Both the position numbers and the translations under genes were made by a program. Positions 2,453-52,046 of a stretch of 64,000 bases of DNA are shown piece by piece; the first letter of the stretch is position 1, and every line of letters begins with the position of its first letter. Location: positions 1 to 64,000 of IMG/VR virus record IMGVR_UViG_3300011113_000640. One strand, written 5' to 3'. Below the pieces are notes generated by a model. The model saw nothing but the letters and a program-made list of their open reading frames with translations. It ran no database searches and was not told the DNA's origin.

Positions 2453-2559
2453 GGTCGTTCCTTGTCAGGCCAGAATATCACGGCCGCGGCCACTGACACT
2501 GCTATCATCACCACAGTCCAGCCCAGCACTTCCAACGCATAGAACATAAAATCAAGCAT
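2449..2559 (-). CDS. 36-aa single-TM membrane peptide
   Basis: Hand translation [36 protein letters not shown]. Coupled by TGATG and ATGA overlaps to both neighbours. Confidence 0.6.
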   Translation of the reverse strand: MLDFMFYALEVLGWTVVMIAVSVAAAVIFWPDKERP

Positions 2560-3854
2560 CAGTGAAACTGTTCCTCTTCAGTGCTGCCCTTGAGTGCCTG
2601 TGTTGACGCTGTGGCTTCTATGGTGGTGGTCACACGGTCAAAATAGCTGGTTCCTACTTCTCTTTGGTGTTTGACTGCTTCAAAACCTCGCGCACCATCG
2701 GCAAATTCTTTTTGCTGTAGGTCCACAAATGCCGACATGCCATTCCTAGCATAGCCATGAGCCAGATCAAACATGCCGTGATTAAGAGCATGAAAGCCAG
2801 CGAGTGTAATGAATTGAAACTTGTAACCCATAGCTCCAAGTTCACGTTGGAAAACGCTGATTGTTGTATCATCTAAATTCTTCTTCCAGTTAAAAGATGG
2901 CGAGCAGTTGTAGGCCAACATCTTGTTAGGGAATTTGTCATGAATTGCATCGGCAAATTTCTTAGCAAAATCCAGATCTGGCGTGCCTGTCTCGCACCAG
3001 ATCAAATCTGCGTAAGGTGCATAGGCCAGGCCACGACTCACGGCCTGCTCAAAGCCGTTGCGTGTTTCATAGAAACCTTCCACTGTGCGCTCACCGGTCA
3101 GGAAAGGTCGGTCGTTTTCGTCCACGTCACTGGTGACCAATGCGGCTGCTTCGGCATCTGTGCGTGCCAATAATACTGTGGGCACACCCAGCACATCGGC
3201 AGCTAGTCGTGCAGCATTGAGTTTGTTGACAGCTTCGCGGGTGGGAATCAAGACCTTGCCGCCCATGTGACCGCACTTCTTGGCACTGGCCAACTGATCT
3301 TCAAAATGCACACCAGCTGCACCGGCTTCGATCATGGCCTTCATGAGTTCGTAGGCATTTAATACACCACCAAAGCCCGACTCGGCGTCGGCCACTATGG
3401 GCTGGAAAAAGTCCACATCTCCAGAACCTTCCATCCACTGGATCTGATCGGCACGTGCAAATGTGTTGTTGATTTTACGTACCATTTCAGGCACTGAATT
3501 CACGGCGTATAAACTTTGATCAGGATACATTTGTCCTGACGTGTTGGCATCAGCTGCCACTTGCCAACCACTTAGATAAATTCCTTTGAGTCCAGCCTTG
3601 ACCTGTTGCAATGCCTGCATGCCTGTTAGTGCGCCTAGGGTGTTAACATAATCTTCTTCCAACAAGCTCATCCATAGTTTGTTGGCACCACGTTCGGCCA
3701 AGCTGTATTCCACAGGATTGGATCCTTGCAAGTCCACTACCTGTTCGGCGGTGTAGTTGCGTTTGATGTGGTCCCAGCGTGGGTTGCTTTCCCATTCTTT
3801 TCTAATGTGTGTTGCTCGTGCTTTTTTGTTCAACGACATTTTGCTTCCTTTCAA
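2559..3854 (-). CDS. aceA: Isocitrate lyase
   Basis: Full-length 431 aa with [22 protein letters not shown], catalytic [25 protein letters not shown] and HQREVG. Confidence 0.97.
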
Positions 3855-46050: not shown

Positions 46051-47724
46051 ATGAACAGCAGATACGACGAACTAGAAATCCTAATCTCAAAATTTACACG
46101 ACCACTCCCCGATCTTCCAGCATACGCCCAGCGTCTTGAAGAAGAATTAGAAATCATAGCCAATCTTAACTTCGCAAAACATTTTTTGCGTGTGAGAGAA
46201 ATCCTGGATCTCACCCGCGACATACCACACATCACCCGAGGATCAGCCGGAAGCAGTCTGCTATGCTGGCTCATGGGCATTTCAGATGTGGATCCCATAG
46301 CTGAACGCATACCCTTGTCAAGGTTCATGAATCCCAAGCGAGATGACCTTCCCGACATTGATCTAGACTTTCCACACTGGCAACAGGAAACTGTGATGAA
46401 CAGAATATTCCGGCGGTGGCCTGGGCAGAGTGCCAGAGTATCAAACTATGTGATGTATAAAGAAAAATCAGCCCGGCGTGAAGCTGCCAAACGCATGGGG
46501 GCCAAAGGCAAATTAAAACGTAATTTTAAATTTGAAGAAGTAGTTCCGGACTATGTGGAAGATGCTGAACGACTCACACAAAAACTCCTGGGCAAGAAAC
46601 GTTGCATATCCAAACACTGTGGTGGCATCTTGATCTTTGACCGTGCAGTGCCTAAAAGTTTAATCAATGGCACCAACCAAATACTCTTGGACAAGTATGA
46701 GATAGAAGATCTCGAACATTTTAAAATAGACATCCTAGCCAATCGCGGACTCAGCCAGCTGTGGGAAATAGAGGAGCGAGACCTGCTGGACTATCCTGAA
46801 TACGATGAGGCTACAGCAGAACTTTTGTGTCGCGGCGATGTGTTGGGTGTAACACAAGCAGAAAGCCCAGCCATGAAAAGACTAGTAAAAGCCATCAAGC
46901 CTAAAAGTCGTAGTGACTGTGTGCTGGCCACGGCACTCATACGTCCTGTGGCTACCATGGGTCGCAGACGTGCTAGTGCTTTCCAAGACTGGTCAACGGA
47001 TCAGCTACAGGATACCATAGTGTTTGAGGATGATGCCATAGAGCTGATCTCGGAAATCCTGGGTTGTGATCAATACACCGCGGACATGTGGCGCAGAGCC
47101 TTTGCCAAGAAAGATGAAGAAAAGATCTTTGAGTTTATGGTGCTTGTGGGTGACCATCCCAAGAAAGAAGAAATATTCCTAGCTCTGCGTGAACTCAGTC
47201 ACTTTGGCCTGTGTAGGGCACATGCCATAAATCTTGGTAGACTGATCTGGGCCTTGGCCTACCAAAAAGCACACAATCCTGAAGCGTTCTGGCGTGCGGC
47301 CCTGAAACACTGCCAAGGATCGTATGCTCGCTGGGTCTACTGGCAAGAAGCCAAGCTGGCCGGTGCTGTGCCTGCTATCATCGAGGGCGGCGAAGTGGCC
47401 GAACTGAGAACCAATGGTCGTTGGAGCAGTCGAAGGTTTATTCCGGCCTGCCAAGAACGTCGTGGCCCGGGCACGGTGGAGTTCTGTGGACTCGTGGCCA
47501 ACTATAGGGTGTTTAAGGCCGACAAAAAGAAATACATAACATTTGTTACACTGGGCACCGGCAATGGTCGATATTTGGATGTGATTGTGCCGCATGCGAT
47601 TTCGTTCCATGATCAACCAATCTTGTGGGGTCAGGGCAAATTGGGGTATAAAAATAATTCGGAATATGTTACAGTGTATAAACACAAGCGTCTAGACTTA
47701 AAGGACATAGAACACTATCAATGA
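46051..47724 (+). CDS. Compact DnaE-like (Pol III alpha family) DNA polymerase lacking the PHP domain
   Basis: TRGSAGSS, RFMNPKRDDLPDIDLDF, KHCGG, FKIDIL, QAESP, ALIRP, CRAHA; OB-like C-terminus. Confidence 0.85.
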   Translation: MNSRYDELEILISKFTRPLPDLPAYAQRLEEELEIIANLNFAKHFLRVREILDLTRDIPHITRGSAGSSLLCWLMGISDVDPIAERIPLSRFMNPKRDDLPDIDLDFPHWQQETVMNRIFRRWPGQSARVSNYVMYKEKSARREAAKRMGAKGKLKRNFKFEEVVPDYVEDAERLTQKLLGKKRCISKHCGGILIFDRAVPKSLINGTNQILLDKYEIEDLEHFKIDILANRGLSQLWEIEERDLLDYPEYDEATAELLCRGDVLGVTQAESPAMKRLVKAIKPKSRSDCVLATALIRPVATMGRRRASAFQDWSTDQLQDTIVFEDDAIELISEILGCDQYTADMWRRAFAKKDEEKIFEFMVLVGDHPKKEEIFLALRELSHFGLCRAHAINLGRLIWALAYQKAHNPEAFWRAALKHCQGSYARWVYWQEAKLAGAVPAIIEGGEVAELRTNGRWSSRRFIPACQERRGPGTVEFCGLVANYRVFKADKKKYITFVTLGTGNGRYLDVIVPHAISFHDQPILWGQGKLGYKNNSEYVTVYKHKRLDLKDIEHYQ

Positions 47725-49077: not shown

Positions 49078-49637
49078 AATACAAGATGTTCAAAGTAATT
49101 GTAATGCTTTTCTAGAGTCCATGTCAATGGATCAACAGCCGTTCCGTCATGTGTTTGATATGTTGCTTGAAACACATTGGTATAGCGCAGAAACGGCAAC
49201 CACATGTTGGGAGTTTTGGCTGCCCAACCAGCATCTTTGAGTGCCATGTGTTTGGCACGGCTCAATCTCACTGTGGGCGCATTGAGAGCTTGATCAACTG
49301 TGATACAATCGGCCAGCAATAAGTCACGAATCCTAGCCGCCGGAATCAAGTGTTCAAAATCGCACTCGTCGTCGGCCCCAATTTCGTGATAGTGTGCTTT
49401 CATGCCATCACGCTGCTGGATACAGTATTCGTGATATCTGCGCAGGCTGTCATCGATGTCGTTGCGAATTTCGCGCAGGAGTTGTTGATCATTTTCCACG
49501 GCATGATATTCGTTGACAAATTGACCTAGCTTGCCACGACAACGATTGGCCACGGTTCGATAAGTTTCGGGACTGCGTTGGGTCTTGCCGTAGACCGGAG
49601 CTACAAATTTTTCAAGCGATTCTTTTAACTGGTTCAT
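49074..49637 (-). CDS. Hypothetical protein with EHxxP (possible HNH/DUF1524-like) motif
   Basis: CDFEHLIPA...NAPTVRLS...H. Confidence 0.55.
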   Translation of the reverse strand: MNQLKESLEKFVAPVYGKTQRSPETYRTVANRCRGKLGQFVNEYHAVENDQQLLREIRNDIDDSLRRYHEYCIQQRDGMKAHYHEIGADDECDFEHLIPAARIRDLLLADCITVDQALNAPTVRLSRAKHMALKDAGWAAKTPNMWLPFLRYTNVFQATYQTHDGTAVDPLTWTLEKHYNYFEHLVL

Positions 49638-50097
49638 GGTATTCTTCCTCGTCGTTGTCGGATTCTAGAAAATTAAACATTCGATGAAACGCTTCAGTCT
49701 TTTGAATCTGATTGTTTAGTGATTTTTTAATTCTTTGACCATTTATCTTGTGCTTTTGATTGTTGTAATCTCCAGATCTGCGTCCTTTGTGTTTGTGACA
49801 CATTGGGCATAATTCATCTAAGTTATCAGGATTGTTGTTTTCTCGGTCACCGTCTTTGTGATCAACTTCGGTCATTCCTACAGCCCAAGGAGATTTTTCA
49901 TAGTCAATGCAACATGGAAATCCCAAATGACCATCATGGTTGCTACATTTACCTTGTTTCCAAGGTGTTACTCCAGGTGCATGTGCATGCTTGCCGTAAC
50001 TGGCCCCTTGACAATGTCCGCAATGAACTCTCCAACGTTTTCCATCATGTGCTTGCGGCTTTCCACAACCAGGATTAATACATATTCCTCTGGACAC
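49612..50097 (-). CDS. HNH endonuclease
   Basis: EVDHKDGDRENNNPDNLDELCPMCH and CxxC pairs. Confidence 0.85.
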   Translation of the reverse strand: MSRGICINPGCGKPQAHDGKRWRVHCGHCQGASYGKHAHAPGVTPWKQGKCSNHDGHLGFPCCIDYEKSPWAVGMTEVDHKDGDRENNNPDNLDELCPMCHKHKGRRSGDYNNQKHKINGQRIKKSLNNQIQKTEAFHRMFNFLESDNDEEEYHEPVKRIA

Positions 50098-50098
50098 A

Positions 50099-51157
50099 TT
50101 ATTCTCCTTGTGGAAACAGACCAGGAGCTACATTGCCATCAACAATACCAACCTTGGCACCTTCACCATGATACGGAAGATTCAATTGGCCACCGTTGCG
50201 TAGGTGCATCTCACGCAGGAAGTTGCTCATGGCAGTAGGAGCTACCCACCCTGCACCTGGATGACTGTGTTCCCATTGAATTTTTGCTTTGGCATGAATT
50301 AAGTGACTGCTTTTAAAAGTAGTCTTCGCAGATTCCAATAAAGTTTTCATCCAACCATCAGGCAATTTGCCACGAGAATTTGTGTTGTTTAATCGTTGCA
50401 ATTCACACAGGCCAATAAACACACCTTGATCAATTTCTTCTTGTAAGGGAAACACTGTTTTTATAGCATCCAGTATGGCATACAAAATCTTGCCGGATTC
50501 GTCAATTTCAATACCTTTGTATGCGTACTTGAAATGACTAAAGAAGTAATCATGATCGCCGCGTAAATTATCGCTGGACCGGGAACCTTTGTCTTGCAGG
50601 TCGATTTGTAAATTATCAAATTGATCTTGCAAGGTGCGAGCACACACATTACGACTTTCTCGACTGCCATTTTTGTAACGAACCAAAGCGTTACGATGCA
50701 AATCTCCTGGACCCAAACGCTTTACACCAGTGTCATTGAGCATTTCAAATGCCAGGCTAGCAAAGTTGGGATCATCGGTATGAACCACTGCTCCGGGAAT
50801 TTCTGTATAGCCTAAAATGGTGGCCGAAATGGTTCTGTGCTGACCATCGTAGGTATCGTTACGATCGCGATCTTTCAAACGACAAGCCGACACAGGACTA
50901 CAAATTCTAGGATCCCAGTTCTTCATGATACTGATAATGTGTTTGTGCAAGACATCTCGTTGGACTTCATAGTCAATCCAAAGATCGTCGATAGGAACCA
51001 TTTTTGATTCGGGAAAGTTGTATCCCAGAGTGTGTTTGGCTTGAGCTTGTACACGGAAAGAATCAAGTTCTCGTTGCGTGATGTTGTAGTGGGCCTTGAT
51101 TTGCTTTTCAACTTCCGCGGCCACGTCGGTGAGTTTTCTTGTGAGGCGTTGTGCCAT
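50099..51157 (-). CDS. ParB/Srx-fold DGQHR-motif protein
   Basis: YEVQR, YDGQHRT, FEMLND. Confidence 0.7.
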   Translation of the reverse strand: MAQRLTRKLTDVAAEVEKQIKAHYNITQRELDSFRVQAQAKHTLGYNFPESKMVPIDDLWIDYEVQRDVLHKHIISIMKNWDPRICSPVSACRLKDRDRNDTYDGQHRTISATILGYTEIPGAVVHTDDPNFASLAFEMLNDTGVKRLGPGDLHRNALVRYKNGSRESRNVCARTLQDQFDNLQIDLQDKGSRSSDNLRGDHDYFFSHFKYAYKGIEIDESGKILYAILDAIKTVFPLQEEIDQGVFIGLCELQRLNNTNSRGKLPDGWMKTLLESAKTTFKSSHLIHAKAKIQWEHSHPGAGWVAPTAMSNFLREMHLRNGGQLNLPYHGEGAKVGIVDGNVAPGLFPQGE

Positions 51158-51242
51158 TTTACATCCTTTCATAGCAGTCCTAGGACTGTCGGTTAATAAA
51201 CAGCCGCCAATTTCCTAATTTTAAATTGGCTAGCTAATAGTA

Positions 51243-51271
51243 ATTATACTATAAATACCAGACTTTGTCAA
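51243..51271 (-). promoter_or_regulatory. sigma70-type promoter TTGACA-17-TATAAT
   Basis: Perfect consensus. Confidence 0.8.
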
Positions 51272-51277
51272 TCACTT

Positions 51278-51297
51278 ATGTTAGTGCGCACTAACAT
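51278..51297. promoter_or_regulatory. Perfect 20-bp palindrome ATGTTAGTGCGCACTAACAT upstream of the -35 box
   Basis: Seen directly; same offset as 40722-40737. Confidence 0.65.
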
Positions 51298-51528
51298 AAT
51301 GCTCTGCGTCCCCCGGTGGTTACTATAGTAGAAATCCGTGCTGTAATCCAATGACAGCACATCTTGGTTGCCCGATAGGGCTCAGCAAGACTGCAATCTC
51401 TACCTCACCATCCACTCCACGACAGGGACCGTTCACGCATTGCCAGCGGCCTTTGGGTCGGAAGACTACCACCCGTGGTAGCTACTCCACTTCAATCGTC
51501 CGGGTCAGACTAGTTCCTGCTACAGAAC
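51298..51528 (-). ncRNA. Candidate ~230-nt multi-stem structured RNA
   Basis: Nested stems GTCCCT/GGGGAC, GTAGAGAT/ATTTCTAC, TCTTG/CAAGA, CCC/GGG, GTGCTGT/ACAGCAC and CTACCA/TGGTAG. G-U pairs favour the minus strand. Confidence 0.5.
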
Positions 51529-51537
51529 ACGTTACTG

Positions 51538-51855
51538 TCAAACTATGACCGAGTCAGTGACTCGATCACTGTAAATCTTTGTGCCATGAGCTCTGACGAA
51601 ATCCACCATGGCCTGTGGTGTGGTTTCAAACATTCCACGCACCTGTGTGAGTCCATGATCGCCTGAGTCAAAAGTGTAGATCTCATAGTGCCTTTGGCTG
51701 TTGAACTGTGCTCGTAGCTTCAGCATGTCAACACTGAATCCTGGCGTGTATTTCTTGCCATTGAGTTCGGCCCACATGCACTTTTTTTCTTCCTCAGTGA
51801 TGTCGATCACGCACTCTAGACCTTCGCTACACCACATGGCTAGTATCCGGCTCAA
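51538..51855 (-). CDS. Hypothetical protein
   Basis: ORF in a tightly packed run. Confidence 0.65.
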   Translation of the reverse strand: MSRILAMWCSEGLECVIDITEEEKKCMWAELNGKKYTPGFSVDMLKLRAQFNSQRHYEIYTFDSGDHGLTQVRGMFETTPQAMVDFVRAHGTKIYSDRVTDSVIV

Positions 51856-52046
51856 TGTACGGTATCTCCACCATCCACCCCCCAGAATACACTGTCACCA
51901 CGATCCCAGCGTTCCTGCATGGTCTTTTCCATCACAGCTTGTTGAACTAAGACCAGGACTTCATCCACTTCGCTTTTGGTCAGCATGCTTTCAGGCAGTT
52001 TGCCCTCCAGCACAGCCATCACAATCATTTCACGTTCTGGAGTCAT
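51852..52046 (-). CDS. Hypothetical protein
   Basis: ORF in a tightly packed run. Confidence 0.6.
   Translation of the reverse strand: MTPEREMIVMAVLEGKLPESMLTKSEVDEVLVLVQQAVMEKTMQERWDRGDSVFWGVDGGDTVH

What the first reader, a model, noticed from the sequence alone, without database searches (positions are those of the whole stretch)
51298..51528. ~230-nt intergenic region folding into a nested multi-branch RNA
Seen: no convincing ORF is present, but at least seven stems nest consistently. AATGC/GCATT encloses GTCCCT/GGGGAC, then GGTG/CACC, then GTAGAGAT/ATTTCTAC, which holds two hairpins; CTACCA/TGGTAG and GTTCT/GGAAC lie 5'. G-U pairs work only on the minus strand, and the region is GC-richer than the flanking promoter DNA. 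No tRNA, tmRNA or RNase P hallmarks are present. Inference: it is a novel phage ncRNA or ribozyme.
Basis: partly seen in the sequence, partly recalled or inferred. Interest (0 to 1): 0.6.

Follow-up and report, generated by a model that had tools for sequence, protein, structure and literature searches.

The report
New structured RNA of phage tRNA islands
The intergenic stretch encodes a real, conserved, pseudoknotted ~235-nt non-coding RNA that many uncultured freshwater phages carry, usually wedged between their tRNA genes; it matches no Rfam family and its function is unknown.

Summary
The window is the first 64 kb of a 320-kb jumbo-phage record. Window 51533-51298 (-) belongs to a family with about 90 homologues in IMG/VR contigs.

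- **Fold:** P1-P7 and a pseudoknot are held by many compensatory changes. The 5' domain is 89% paired against 74% in shuffles. P7 plus its junction is 99.5% paired against 84%. P6 occurs in more than 25 complementary versions.
- **Strand:** G-U pairs fix the gene strand as the RNA strand.
- **Known families:** Rfam 15, ARAGORN, GenBank phages and 185,579 prokaryote genomes give no convincing match.
- **Context:** 36 of 58 non-redundant members lie in or beside phage tRNA arrays, always on the tRNA strand. The next tRNA starts 3-12 nt after the RNA. The window copy stands alone, just upstream of a perfect sigma-70 promoter.
- **Expression:** RNA-library contigs from four studies cover only 51328-51517 and none of the flanks.
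- **The 65-aa + strand ORF** is not conserved.
- **Best reading:** a stable trans-acting ncRNA, cut out by tRNA-processing enzymes when it lies in an array.
- **Closest analogues by context:** GOLLD, ROOL and T4 species 1/2 RNAs.

The parts
51298..51533 (-). Whole RNA gene as inferred: 5' tail AACGU, P1-P7, 3' tail CAGAGCAUU; about 236 nt
   Evidence: nhmmer and CM matches to homologues span this range. RNA-library contigs lie at 51328-51517 only.
51513..51528 (-). P1 hairpin (GUUCU / GGAAC), followed by the invariant CUAGU at 51513-51509
   Evidence: 4 of 5 pairs show changes on both sides. The CM alignment shows many different P1 sequences. CUAGU is invariant in 59 sequences.
51498..51510 (-). 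P2 hairpin (GUCU / GGAC) with loop GACCC
   Evidence: 100% paired. The third pair is C-G 24, G-C 24, A-U 9.
51471..51505 (-). Pseudoknot: ACCC of the P2 loop (51505-51502) with GGGU (51474-51471) just after P3
   Evidence: 100% paired in 57 sequences. C-G changes to U-A in 13 and to U-G in 1.
51475..51490 (-). P3 hairpin (GUGG / CCAC)
   Evidence: All 4 pairs show changes on both sides; see also the CM alignment.
51449..51466 (-). P4 hairpin (GUCUU / AAGGC) with invariant ACC in the loop. Relatives insert one to three extra hairpins just 5' of it, several closed by GNRA-type loops.
   Evidence: The three inner pairs are 95% paired and all show changes on both sides. The insertions are visible.
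51436..51448 (-). P5 hairpin (CGC / GCG) with loop UGGCAAU
   Evidence: 100% paired. The inner pair is C-G 28, U-A 25, G-C 2.
51423..51431 (-). P6, 5' strand (CGGUCCCUG)
   Evidence: More than 25 different mutually complementary P6 versions across the family; mutual-information pairs.
51307..51315 (-). P6, 3' strand plus the two junction nucleotides CG (CGGGGGACG)
   Evidence: Junction pairs C51421-G51314 and G51418-C51315 covary: C-G/U-A/A-U and G-C/C-G.
51412..51422 (-). Conserved junction UCGUGGA followed by the P7 5' strand GUGG
   Evidence: AG and GG are invariant. P7 plus junction is 99.5% paired against 84% in shuffles.
51316..51319 (-). P7 3' strand CCAC
   Evidence: pair 35-167 is C-G 34, U-A 22, A-U 2.
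51320..51411 (-). Variable distal domain (a long stem holding two hairpins). Minimal relatives replace it with a short loop.
   Evidence: Alignments. The window-specific stems are predicted by folding and kept through G-U changes in L003 and L180.
51298..51306 (-). 3' tail CAGAGCAUU with invariant AGCA. In arrays the next tRNA starts 3-12 nt after AGCA.
51276..51299 (.). 24-nt perfect palindrome (10-bp stem, 4-nt loop) between the RNA and the promoter, with no U tract
   Evidence: Self-match. Read from sequence. A related palindrome is present in L003, L180 and L005.
51243..51271 (-). Consensus sigma-70 promoter TTGACA-17-TATAAT for the 357-aa gene (50099-51172, minus strand). It separates the RNA from that gene.
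   Evidence: 12 of 12 matches.

Best explanation
Window 51533-51298 (minus strand) is a single-copy gene for a stable, highly structured non-coding RNA. It belongs to a family found so far only in uncultured phage contigs; runs holding this stretch are largely freshwater or lake samples.

**Fold (shown).** A 5' domain holds four hairpins (P1, P2, P3, P4) and P5. The P2 loop pairs with the strand after P3 as a pseudoknot. A 3' domain is one long irregular hairpin (P6, a conserved junction, P7, then a variable tip).

**How it is made (inferred from anatomy).** The RNA is transcribed on the gene strand as part of a longer transcript and then cut out. In most phages it lies flush between tRNAs. 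There, RNase P cleavage of the next tRNA's 5' end would set its 3' end, and 3' trimming of the preceding tRNA would set its 5' side. In this phage it has moved out of the tRNA array, which lies at 270-279 kb. Here it trails a 105-aa ORF and ends at a 10-bp hairpin just before the next promoter.

**What it does (inferred, weakest step).** It accumulates and acts in trans during infection, most likely on tRNA or translation biology or as an RNA scaffold. This is the same open category as GOLLD, ROOL and the T4 species 1 and 2 RNAs. It does not regulate the neighbouring gene.
For: **Family**
- nhmmer finds the whole element in relatives.
About 90 are confirmed by profile or CM (37-110 bits).

**Structure**
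- 5' domain: 89.1% of cells paired against 74.0% in shuffles (0 of 500 shuffles reach it) and 29-46% when partners are slid. 209 cells change on both sides.
- Pseudoknot: 100% paired, with 13 C-G to U-A changes.
- P7 and junction: 99.5% against 83.6% on an unfitted MAFFT alignment.
- P6: more than 25 compensatory versions.

**Strand**
- Abundant G-U pairs on the gene strand.
- tRNAs occur in 37 loci and all are on the RNA's strand.

**Processing context**
- 36 of 58 members are in or next to tRNA arrays.
- The upstream tRNA ends 20-24 nt before CUAGU, and the downstream tRNA starts 3-12 nt after AGCA.

**Expression**
- Contigs from four RNA libraries in four studies lie only on 51328-51517, with zero depth on 51000-51305 and 51544-52000.
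- One 166-nt contig differs at only 2 letters.

**Independent gene**
- Single copy in its own genome.
- Three of four near-complete jumbo relatives that lack it at this locus carry one copy elsewhere. Two of these directly follow a tRNA.
- No neighbouring protein family is shared by more than 20 of 86 loci.

**Not cis-regulatory here**
- A 12/12 consensus promoter lies between the RNA and the downstream gene.
Against: - No function was tested, and 'acts in trans on tRNA or translation' rests on genomic context only.
- The RNA-library evidence comes from assembled contigs. It shows neither strand nor ends nor level, and part of the depth comes from relatives (90-95% identity).
- Single-sequence folding energy is ordinary (z about -1).
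- One complete 374-kb relative has no match to the 5'-domain model.
- About a third of the members, including this one, have no tRNA nearby, so release by tRNA-processing enzymes cannot be the general route.
- The family may already be among the 8,495 unnamed IMG/VR candidates of Fremin et al. 2023 (PMC10690425).
Confidence: 0.75

Rival explanations
1. It is a ribozyme: either self-cleaving at its 5' edge to free the preceding tRNA's CCA end (as HDV-like theta ribozymes do in gut phages), or a trans-acting tRNA-processing RNA that binds tRNA 3' ends.
For: - It sits flush against tRNAs.
- It has a roughly 165-nt conserved core with a pseudoknot, invariant junction and loop nucleotides, and extra hairpins inserted near P4 in relatives, several with GNRA-type loops. 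This build resembles that of large ribozymes.
- The invariant UGGU and loop UGGC are complementary to tRNA ACCA/GCCA ends. RNase P and T-boxes use the same principle (established knowledge).
- Theta ribozymes next to phage tRNAs are precedent (PMC10879173, found).
Against: - No HDV-type, hatchet, twister, glmS or RNase P model matches, even at E up to 10.
- The 5' tail is not conserved in members away from tRNAs.
- A third of the members have no tRNA to process.
- GGGU of the UGGU strand is already used in the pseudoknot.
- Catalysis was not tested.
Confidence: 0.12
2. It is a highly divergent member of a known RNA family (RNase P RNA, tmRNA, group I intron, GOLLD/ROOL fragment, Y RNA, 6S RNA).
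For: - The genomic setting is the one typical of GOLLD and ROOL (PMC12286853).
- The phage does encode a tmRNA and tRNAs elsewhere.
Against: - ARAGORN finds nothing here.
- Rfam 15 gives no hit at gathering score or at E up to 10 on the window copy, and none at E up to 5 on the RNA in ten other members.
- The flanking genes vary, so no host gene is split as an intron would require.
- The 5'-domain model does not match T4 rnaC or rnaD.
Confidence: 0.05
3. It is a cis-regulatory leader or riboswitch, or a 3' UTR element, controlling a neighbouring protein gene.
For: - It lies between two same-strand genes.
- A divergent subfamily (L122, L124/L214, L222) lies directly upstream of protein genes with ribosome-binding sites.
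Against: - A consensus promoter separates it from the downstream gene.
- Neighbours differ from locus to locus.
- Most copies are flanked by tRNAs, not ORFs.
- 74 of the 80 loci that hold the 357-aa gene lack the RNA next to it.
Confidence: 0.04
4. The conserved element is the 65-aa ORF on the + strand (51351-51548), or a DNA-level site such as an origin or recombination site, and not an RNA.
For: - The antisense strand is unusually poor in stop codons: 45 of 59 members have a frame open over at least 70% of the element.
- A palindrome lies next to the element.
Against: - The frame breaks by indels in the 91%-identical L003 and in L180.
- Distances between invariant anchors are spread over all three residues mod 3: 23/19/17 and 26/18/15.
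- Only 13 of 59 members keep an anchor-relative frame open.
- The ORF has no Pfam or PHROG hit.
- Substitutions are compensatory, with strand-specific G-U pairs.
- RNA-library contigs cover the element and not its flanks.
Confidence: 0.02

Closest known systems
GOLLD and ROOL RNAs (large ornate phage and prophage RNAs)
   Same: All are encoded by phages, often in or beside tRNA islands, are highly structured with pseudoknots, abundant, have no known protein partner and no known function (PMC12286853; context here).
   Different: There is no sequence or structure match to their Rfam models. This RNA is much smaller: about 165-nt core and 190-310 nt overall, against about 580 and 800+ nt. It was found only in phage contigs, not in prokaryote genomes or prophages. 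Oligomer or cage formation is untested.
Phage T4 species 1 and species 2 RNAs (rnaC, rnaD)
   Same: These small stable RNAs of unknown function are encoded immediately downstream of a tRNA in the T4 tRNA cluster, on the same strand and with 1-6 nt spacers. They are therefore made from tRNA transcripts.
   Different: They are not homologous: the 5'-domain model scores 0.5 bits on them. They are 139 and 119 nt, and rnaC ends in a T-arm-like hairpin (read). This RNA has no tRNA-like arm.
HDV-like theta ribozymes next to phage tRNAs (PMC10879173)
   Same: These are structured RNAs abutting tRNA genes in phage genomes and are thought to take part in tRNA 3' end release.
   Different: No HDV-type Rfam model matches. 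This RNA is three to four times larger, and many copies have no tRNA neighbour. Self-cleavage was not tested.
RNase P RNA L15 loop and the T-box bulge (UGGN pairing with tRNA NCCA)
   Same: Both have invariant UGG-containing single-stranded elements in an RNA linked to tRNA genes. This is a resemblance recalled from established knowledge and is only a lead.
   Different: There is no homology to either family. Part of the GGGUGGU strand is shown to pair within the molecule. tRNA binding is untested.

Membership tests
tRNA / tmRNA | Cloverleaf or tRNA-like domain with a tag reading frame, detectable by ARAGORN | tested here: not met
   No tRNA or tmRNA anywhere in the 64-kb window. The phage's own tmRNA and 7 tRNAs lie at 270-279 kb.
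RNase P RNA | Match to the bacterial, archaeal or type-T RNase P covariance models (P4 core) | tested here: not met
   No Rfam hit at gathering score or at E up to 10. No hit on the RNA in ten other members.
Group I intron | Match to the intron core model, and interruption of a host gene whose exons flank it | tested here: not met
   No Intron_gpI hit. The flanks are unrelated ORFs or complete tRNAs that differ between loci.
GOLLD / ROOL | Match to the family covariance model | tested here: not met
   No hit in the window or in ten other members.
GOLLD / ROOL | Phage-encoded, near tRNA islands | tested here: met
   36 of 58 members lie in or next to tRNA arrays.
T4 rnaC / rnaD | Sequence and structure homology | tested here: not met
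   cmsearch with R1, filters off, on the T4 tRNA region: 0.5 bits, E 7.4 over rnaD.
HDV-like (theta) self-cleaving ribozyme | Nested double-pseudoknot HDV fold | tested here: not met
   No HDV-type Rfam family matches at E up to 10. The published theta-specific models were not available.
HDV-like (theta) self-cleaving ribozyme | Self-cleavage at its 5' edge | not testable with these tools
   Needs an in vitro cleavage assay.
Riboswitch / cis-regulatory leader | Constant position in the 5' UTR of one gene family, with no promoter in between | tested here: not met
   A 12/12 promoter lies between the RNA and the downstream gene. Neighbours vary.
Structured ncRNA gene (generic) | Covarying helices, strand-specific G-U pairs, and presence in RNA libraries without the flanks | tested here: met

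The most novel reading that the evidence does not exclude
The family is a new class of large functional RNA that acts on tRNAs. It could be a ribozyme, or an RNA that captures tRNA 3'-NCCA ends through its invariant UGGU/UGGC elements. Lytic freshwater phages would use it to process, protect or redirect their own or the host's tRNA pool during infection.
Probability: 0.2. Interest if true: 0.9.

Novelty: new variant of a known kind. Interest (0 to 1): 0.65.

Why it matters
Structured RNAs that are large, widespread and functionally unexplained are rare. The phage-borne ones known so far (GOLLD, ROOL) turned out to build unexpected RNA-only assemblies.

This family adds a compact third example from the same genomic niche, phage tRNA islands. 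Its core is about 165 nt. It has a well-determined secondary structure, a pseudoknot, many invariant unpaired nucleotides and clear presence in lake metatranscriptomes.

It is small enough for direct biochemical and structural work. Its position flush between tRNAs gives a concrete hypothesis for how it is made and what it may act on. It also bears on the 50-year-old question of what the T4 species 1 and 2 RNAs, which share this setting, are for.

Tried and rejected
- **Rfam:** gathering score on the whole window; E up to 10 on 51100-51700; E up to 5 on ten other members. Only chance-level hits (HCV SLVII, ST7-OT3) on the window and none on the RNA elsewhere.
- **ARAGORN:** nothing here.
- **Single-sequence MFE:** not significant on either strand.
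- **BLAST against 50,697 GenBank phages:** the window copy, two other members and the 357-aa neighbour protein all gave no match.
- **Pattern scans of 185,579 prokaryote genomes:** 0 hits with the long pattern and 2 with the shorter one. One scores 12 bits with the CM and the other nothing, so both are taken as chance.
- **Homology to T4 rnaC/rnaD:** rejected.
- **A conserved neighbouring protein partner:** none found.
- **+ strand ORF:** rejected.
- **5' tail and 3' tail:** I looked for pairing of GAAC(G/C)(U/C) or of AGCA with other conserved segments and found nothing consistent (and inspection).
- **GGU with loop ACC:** both are invariant, so a second pseudoknot can be neither supported nor excluded.
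- **Group I intron resemblance:** recalled AACCUAA and UGGCAA motifs of the Azoarcus intron were treated as a lead only and dropped after the Rfam results.
- **Literature:** six searches found no description of this RNA. The Fremin et al. 2023 supplements were not held.

Full report
**Setting.** The window is the first 64 kb of a 320,541-bp IMG/VR virus record, estimated 93% complete. Around the finding all long ORFs run on the minus strand. The candidate lies between a 105-aa ORF (51538-51855, minus strand; no family hit) and a 357-aa gene (50099-51172, minus strand; only a weak ParB-like hit at E 0.006). A TTGACA-17-TATAAT promoter, 12 of 12 matches, lies at 51271-51243 on the minus strand, between the candidate and the 357-aa gene. 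A 24-nt perfect palindrome (51276-51299) lies between the candidate and that promoter.

**Homologues.**
- I fetched relatives through the conserved 357-aa protein: 80 loci at 65-97% identity.
- nhmmer then found the whole element upstream of that gene in six of them. Most of the others have a short intergenic region there instead.
- A seven-sequence alignment already showed compensatory changes in six helices.
- About 25 of these are chance matches inside coding sequence. About 90 are confirmed by an HMM profile and by a covariance model.
- The family is absent from 50,697 GenBank phage records by blastn with three different members.
- It is also absent from one-genome-per-species representatives of 185,579 prokaryotes. 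There were 0 hits with the long pattern and 2 with the short one, and neither is convincing with the model.
- Ten further members were scanned against Rfam at E up to 5. All their tRNAs were found, but nothing on the RNA itself.

**Structure, 5' domain.** From 5' to 3' the family shows the following.
- A short tail, often GAAC(G/C)(U/C).
- Hairpin P1, followed by the invariant CUAGU.
- Hairpin P2, whose loop carries A(C/U)CC.
- A purine-rich linker, then hairpin P3.
- The strand GG(G/A)UGGU.
- Hairpin P4 with invariant ACC in its loop. Some lineages carry one to three extra hairpins just 5' of it, several closed by GNRA-type loops.
- Hairpin P5, with a 3-bp stem and the loop UGGCAAU.

**Structure, 3' domain.**
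- P6 (7-9 bp).
- A conserved junction, (G)UCG(G/U)G(A/G)AG opposite CG.
- P7 (G-N-G-G with C-C-N-C).
- A variable distal domain, which six minimal members reduce to a short loop.
- A tail containing the invariant AGCA.

**Covariation.**
- On an unfitted MAFFT alignment of 57 5' domains, 89.1% of cells pair, against 74.0% in shuffles (0 of 500 shuffles reach the observed value). When partners are slid, 29-46% pair. 209 cells change on both sides.
- The P2-loop pseudoknot is 100% paired. Its second pair is C-G in 43 sequences, U-A in 13 and U-G in 1.
- P7 and two junction pairs are 99.5% paired against 83.6% in shuffles. Pair types include C-G/U-A/A-U and G-C/C-G.
- P6 occurs in more than 25 different, mutually complementary sequences.
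- G-U pairs are frequent (U-G in 41 of 57 sequences at one P2 pair), so the folded strand is the gene strand.
- A full-length model could not be calibrated in the time allowed. The 5'-domain model R1 scores 37-110 bits on 87 loci, and 93.8 bits on the window at 51536-51434.

- P1, P6 and the distal stem with two hairpins are right.
- AATGC/GCATT, CTACCA/TGGTAG and GGTG/CACC are window-specific alternatives that the family does not keep. The conserved pairings there are P5, P3 plus the pseudoknot, and a P7 one register away.
- With the family helices enforced, the window RNA folds at -60 kcal/mol, against an unconstrained -82. This is another sign that single-sequence folding misleads here.

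**Genomic context.**
- Of 58 non-redundant members other than the window, 27 have a tRNA immediately up- or downstream. Nine more lie within an array, and 22 have no tRNA in the fetched locus.
- All tRNAs in the 37 loci that have any are on the RNA's strand.
- The upstream tRNA, with encoded CCA, ends 20-24 nt before the C of CUAGU, which is 2-7 nt before P1.
- The downstream tRNA begins 3-12 nt after AGCA.
- The window phage keeps its 7 tRNAs and a permuted tmRNA at 270-279 kb and has one copy of the RNA, at 51 kb.
- Three of four near-complete jumbo relatives that lack the RNA beside the 357-aa gene have one copy elsewhere. Two of those copies directly follow a tRNA. One 374-kb relative has none.
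- No protein family is shared by more than 20 of 86 RNA-bearing loci.
- The RNA therefore behaves as an independent gene that moves about the genome, with a strong preference for tRNA operons.

**Expression.**
- The stretch 51100-51900 is held by DNA runs from many studies, most labelled freshwater, lake or aquatic, and in small shares by six RNA-seq runs.
- I laid four RNA runs from four studies on 51000-52000. Every contig falls between 51328 and 51517. There is no depth on the promoter and 357-aa gene side (51000-51305) or on the 105-aa ORF (51544-52000).
- One 166-nt contig differs at only two letters. Others, at 90-95% identity, carry flanks typical of other family members.
- These are assembled contigs, so strand, ends and level are not shown. 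Silent flanks in the same libraries argue against DNA carry-over.

**Coding alternative.**
- The + strand 65-aa ORF has no family hit.
- Its frame is broken by indels in the 91%-identical L003 and in L180.
- Distances between invariant anchors fall evenly into the three residue classes mod 3: 23/19/17 and 26/18/15.
- Only 13 of 59 members keep an anchor-relative antisense frame open.
- The antisense strand is nonetheless stop-poor in many members. I attribute this to composition and relatedness, but did not test it further.

**What it most likely is and does.**
- *Shown:* a conserved, covarying, pseudoknotted RNA gene on the minus strand, present in RNA libraries, unmatched in Rfam 15 and restricted to phage contigs.
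- *Inferred from anatomy:* it is made as part of longer transcripts. In arrays it is released by the enzymes that mature the flanking tRNAs. In the window phage it is probably co-transcribed with the 105-aa ORF, for which a weak promoter-like site lies at 52074-52045. It ends near the hairpin at 51299-51276.
- *Inferred, with low certainty:* it acts in trans on tRNA or translation biology, or as an RNA scaffold.
- The extra GNRA-capped hairpins of relatives, the invariant junction nucleotides and the UGGU/UGGC elements would also fit a ribozyme or a binder of tRNA 3' ends. I rate that at about 0.1-0.2.

**Comparison with known systems.**
- By context the closest are GOLLD and ROOL (phage RNAs near tRNA islands; PMC12286853) and the T4 species 1 and 2 RNAs. 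The latter lie 1-6 nt apart directly after tRNA-Arg in T4.
- None is homologous.
- Theta ribozymes (PMC10879173) share the tRNA adjacency but not the size or fold family.
- Six literature searches found no description of this RNA.
- It may be one of the unnamed candidates in the IMG/VR survey PMC10690425. I could not check this because no supplementary files are held.

**Verdict.** This is a real and interesting feature: a new family of structured phage ncRNA of unknown function, in a known genomic niche.

Noticed in passing
window 51243-51271 (-): A perfect sigma-70 consensus promoter (TTGACA, 17 nt, TATAAT) drives the 357-aa gene. TTGACA also follows the RNA closely in relatives L004, L030, L078, L159 and L221.
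   Followed up: partly
window 51276-51299: A 24-nt perfect palindrome lies 4 nt upstream of the -35 box and has no U tract. A related palindrome is present in L003, L180 and L005. It could stabilise the RNA's 3' end or be a protein-binding operator.
   Followed up: no
L122:6806-6910, L124:3664-3768, L214:7019-7123, L222:4988-5093: A divergent subfamily scoring 37-61 bits with R1. P1-P3 are kept, but GGGUC replaces GGGUGG and P4/P5 differ. These copies lie directly upstream of protein genes with ribosome-binding sites, so they might act in cis.
   Followed up: no
many relatives, e.g. L151:4232-4359, L185:6404-6519 (not the window copy): The variable distal domain often carries GUGAUG(A/G) on one strand and CUGAUG on the other. 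This resembles box C / box D and could form a kink-turn.
   Followed up: no
own genome G000:C1:270341-279075 (outside the window): Seven tRNAs and a permuted tmRNA (tag ANAANDEVFALAA) lie far from the RNA. Relative L230 also has a permuted tmRNA beside its copy of the RNA.
   Followed up: partly
window 2559-3854 (-): The phage encodes an isocitrate lyase (Pfam ICL, E 6e-106), an unusual auxiliary metabolic gene for a phage.
   Followed up: no
window 46051-47724 (+) and 49612-50097 (-): A 557-aa ORF holds only the NTPase and finger domains of DNA polymerase III alpha, so the gene may be split. An HNH endonuclease gene lies directly downstream of the 357-aa gene.
   Followed up: no
family alignment A2 (antisense strand): The strand opposite the RNA is unusually poor in stop codons: 45 of 59 members have a frame open over at least 70% of the element. 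No frame is conserved, however. This is probably a composition effect.
   Followed up: partly
G002 (374,314-bp relative reached through L014): This relative is complete by CheckV but has no match to the 5'-domain model. The RNA is therefore dispensable or strongly diverged in some close relatives.
   Followed up: no
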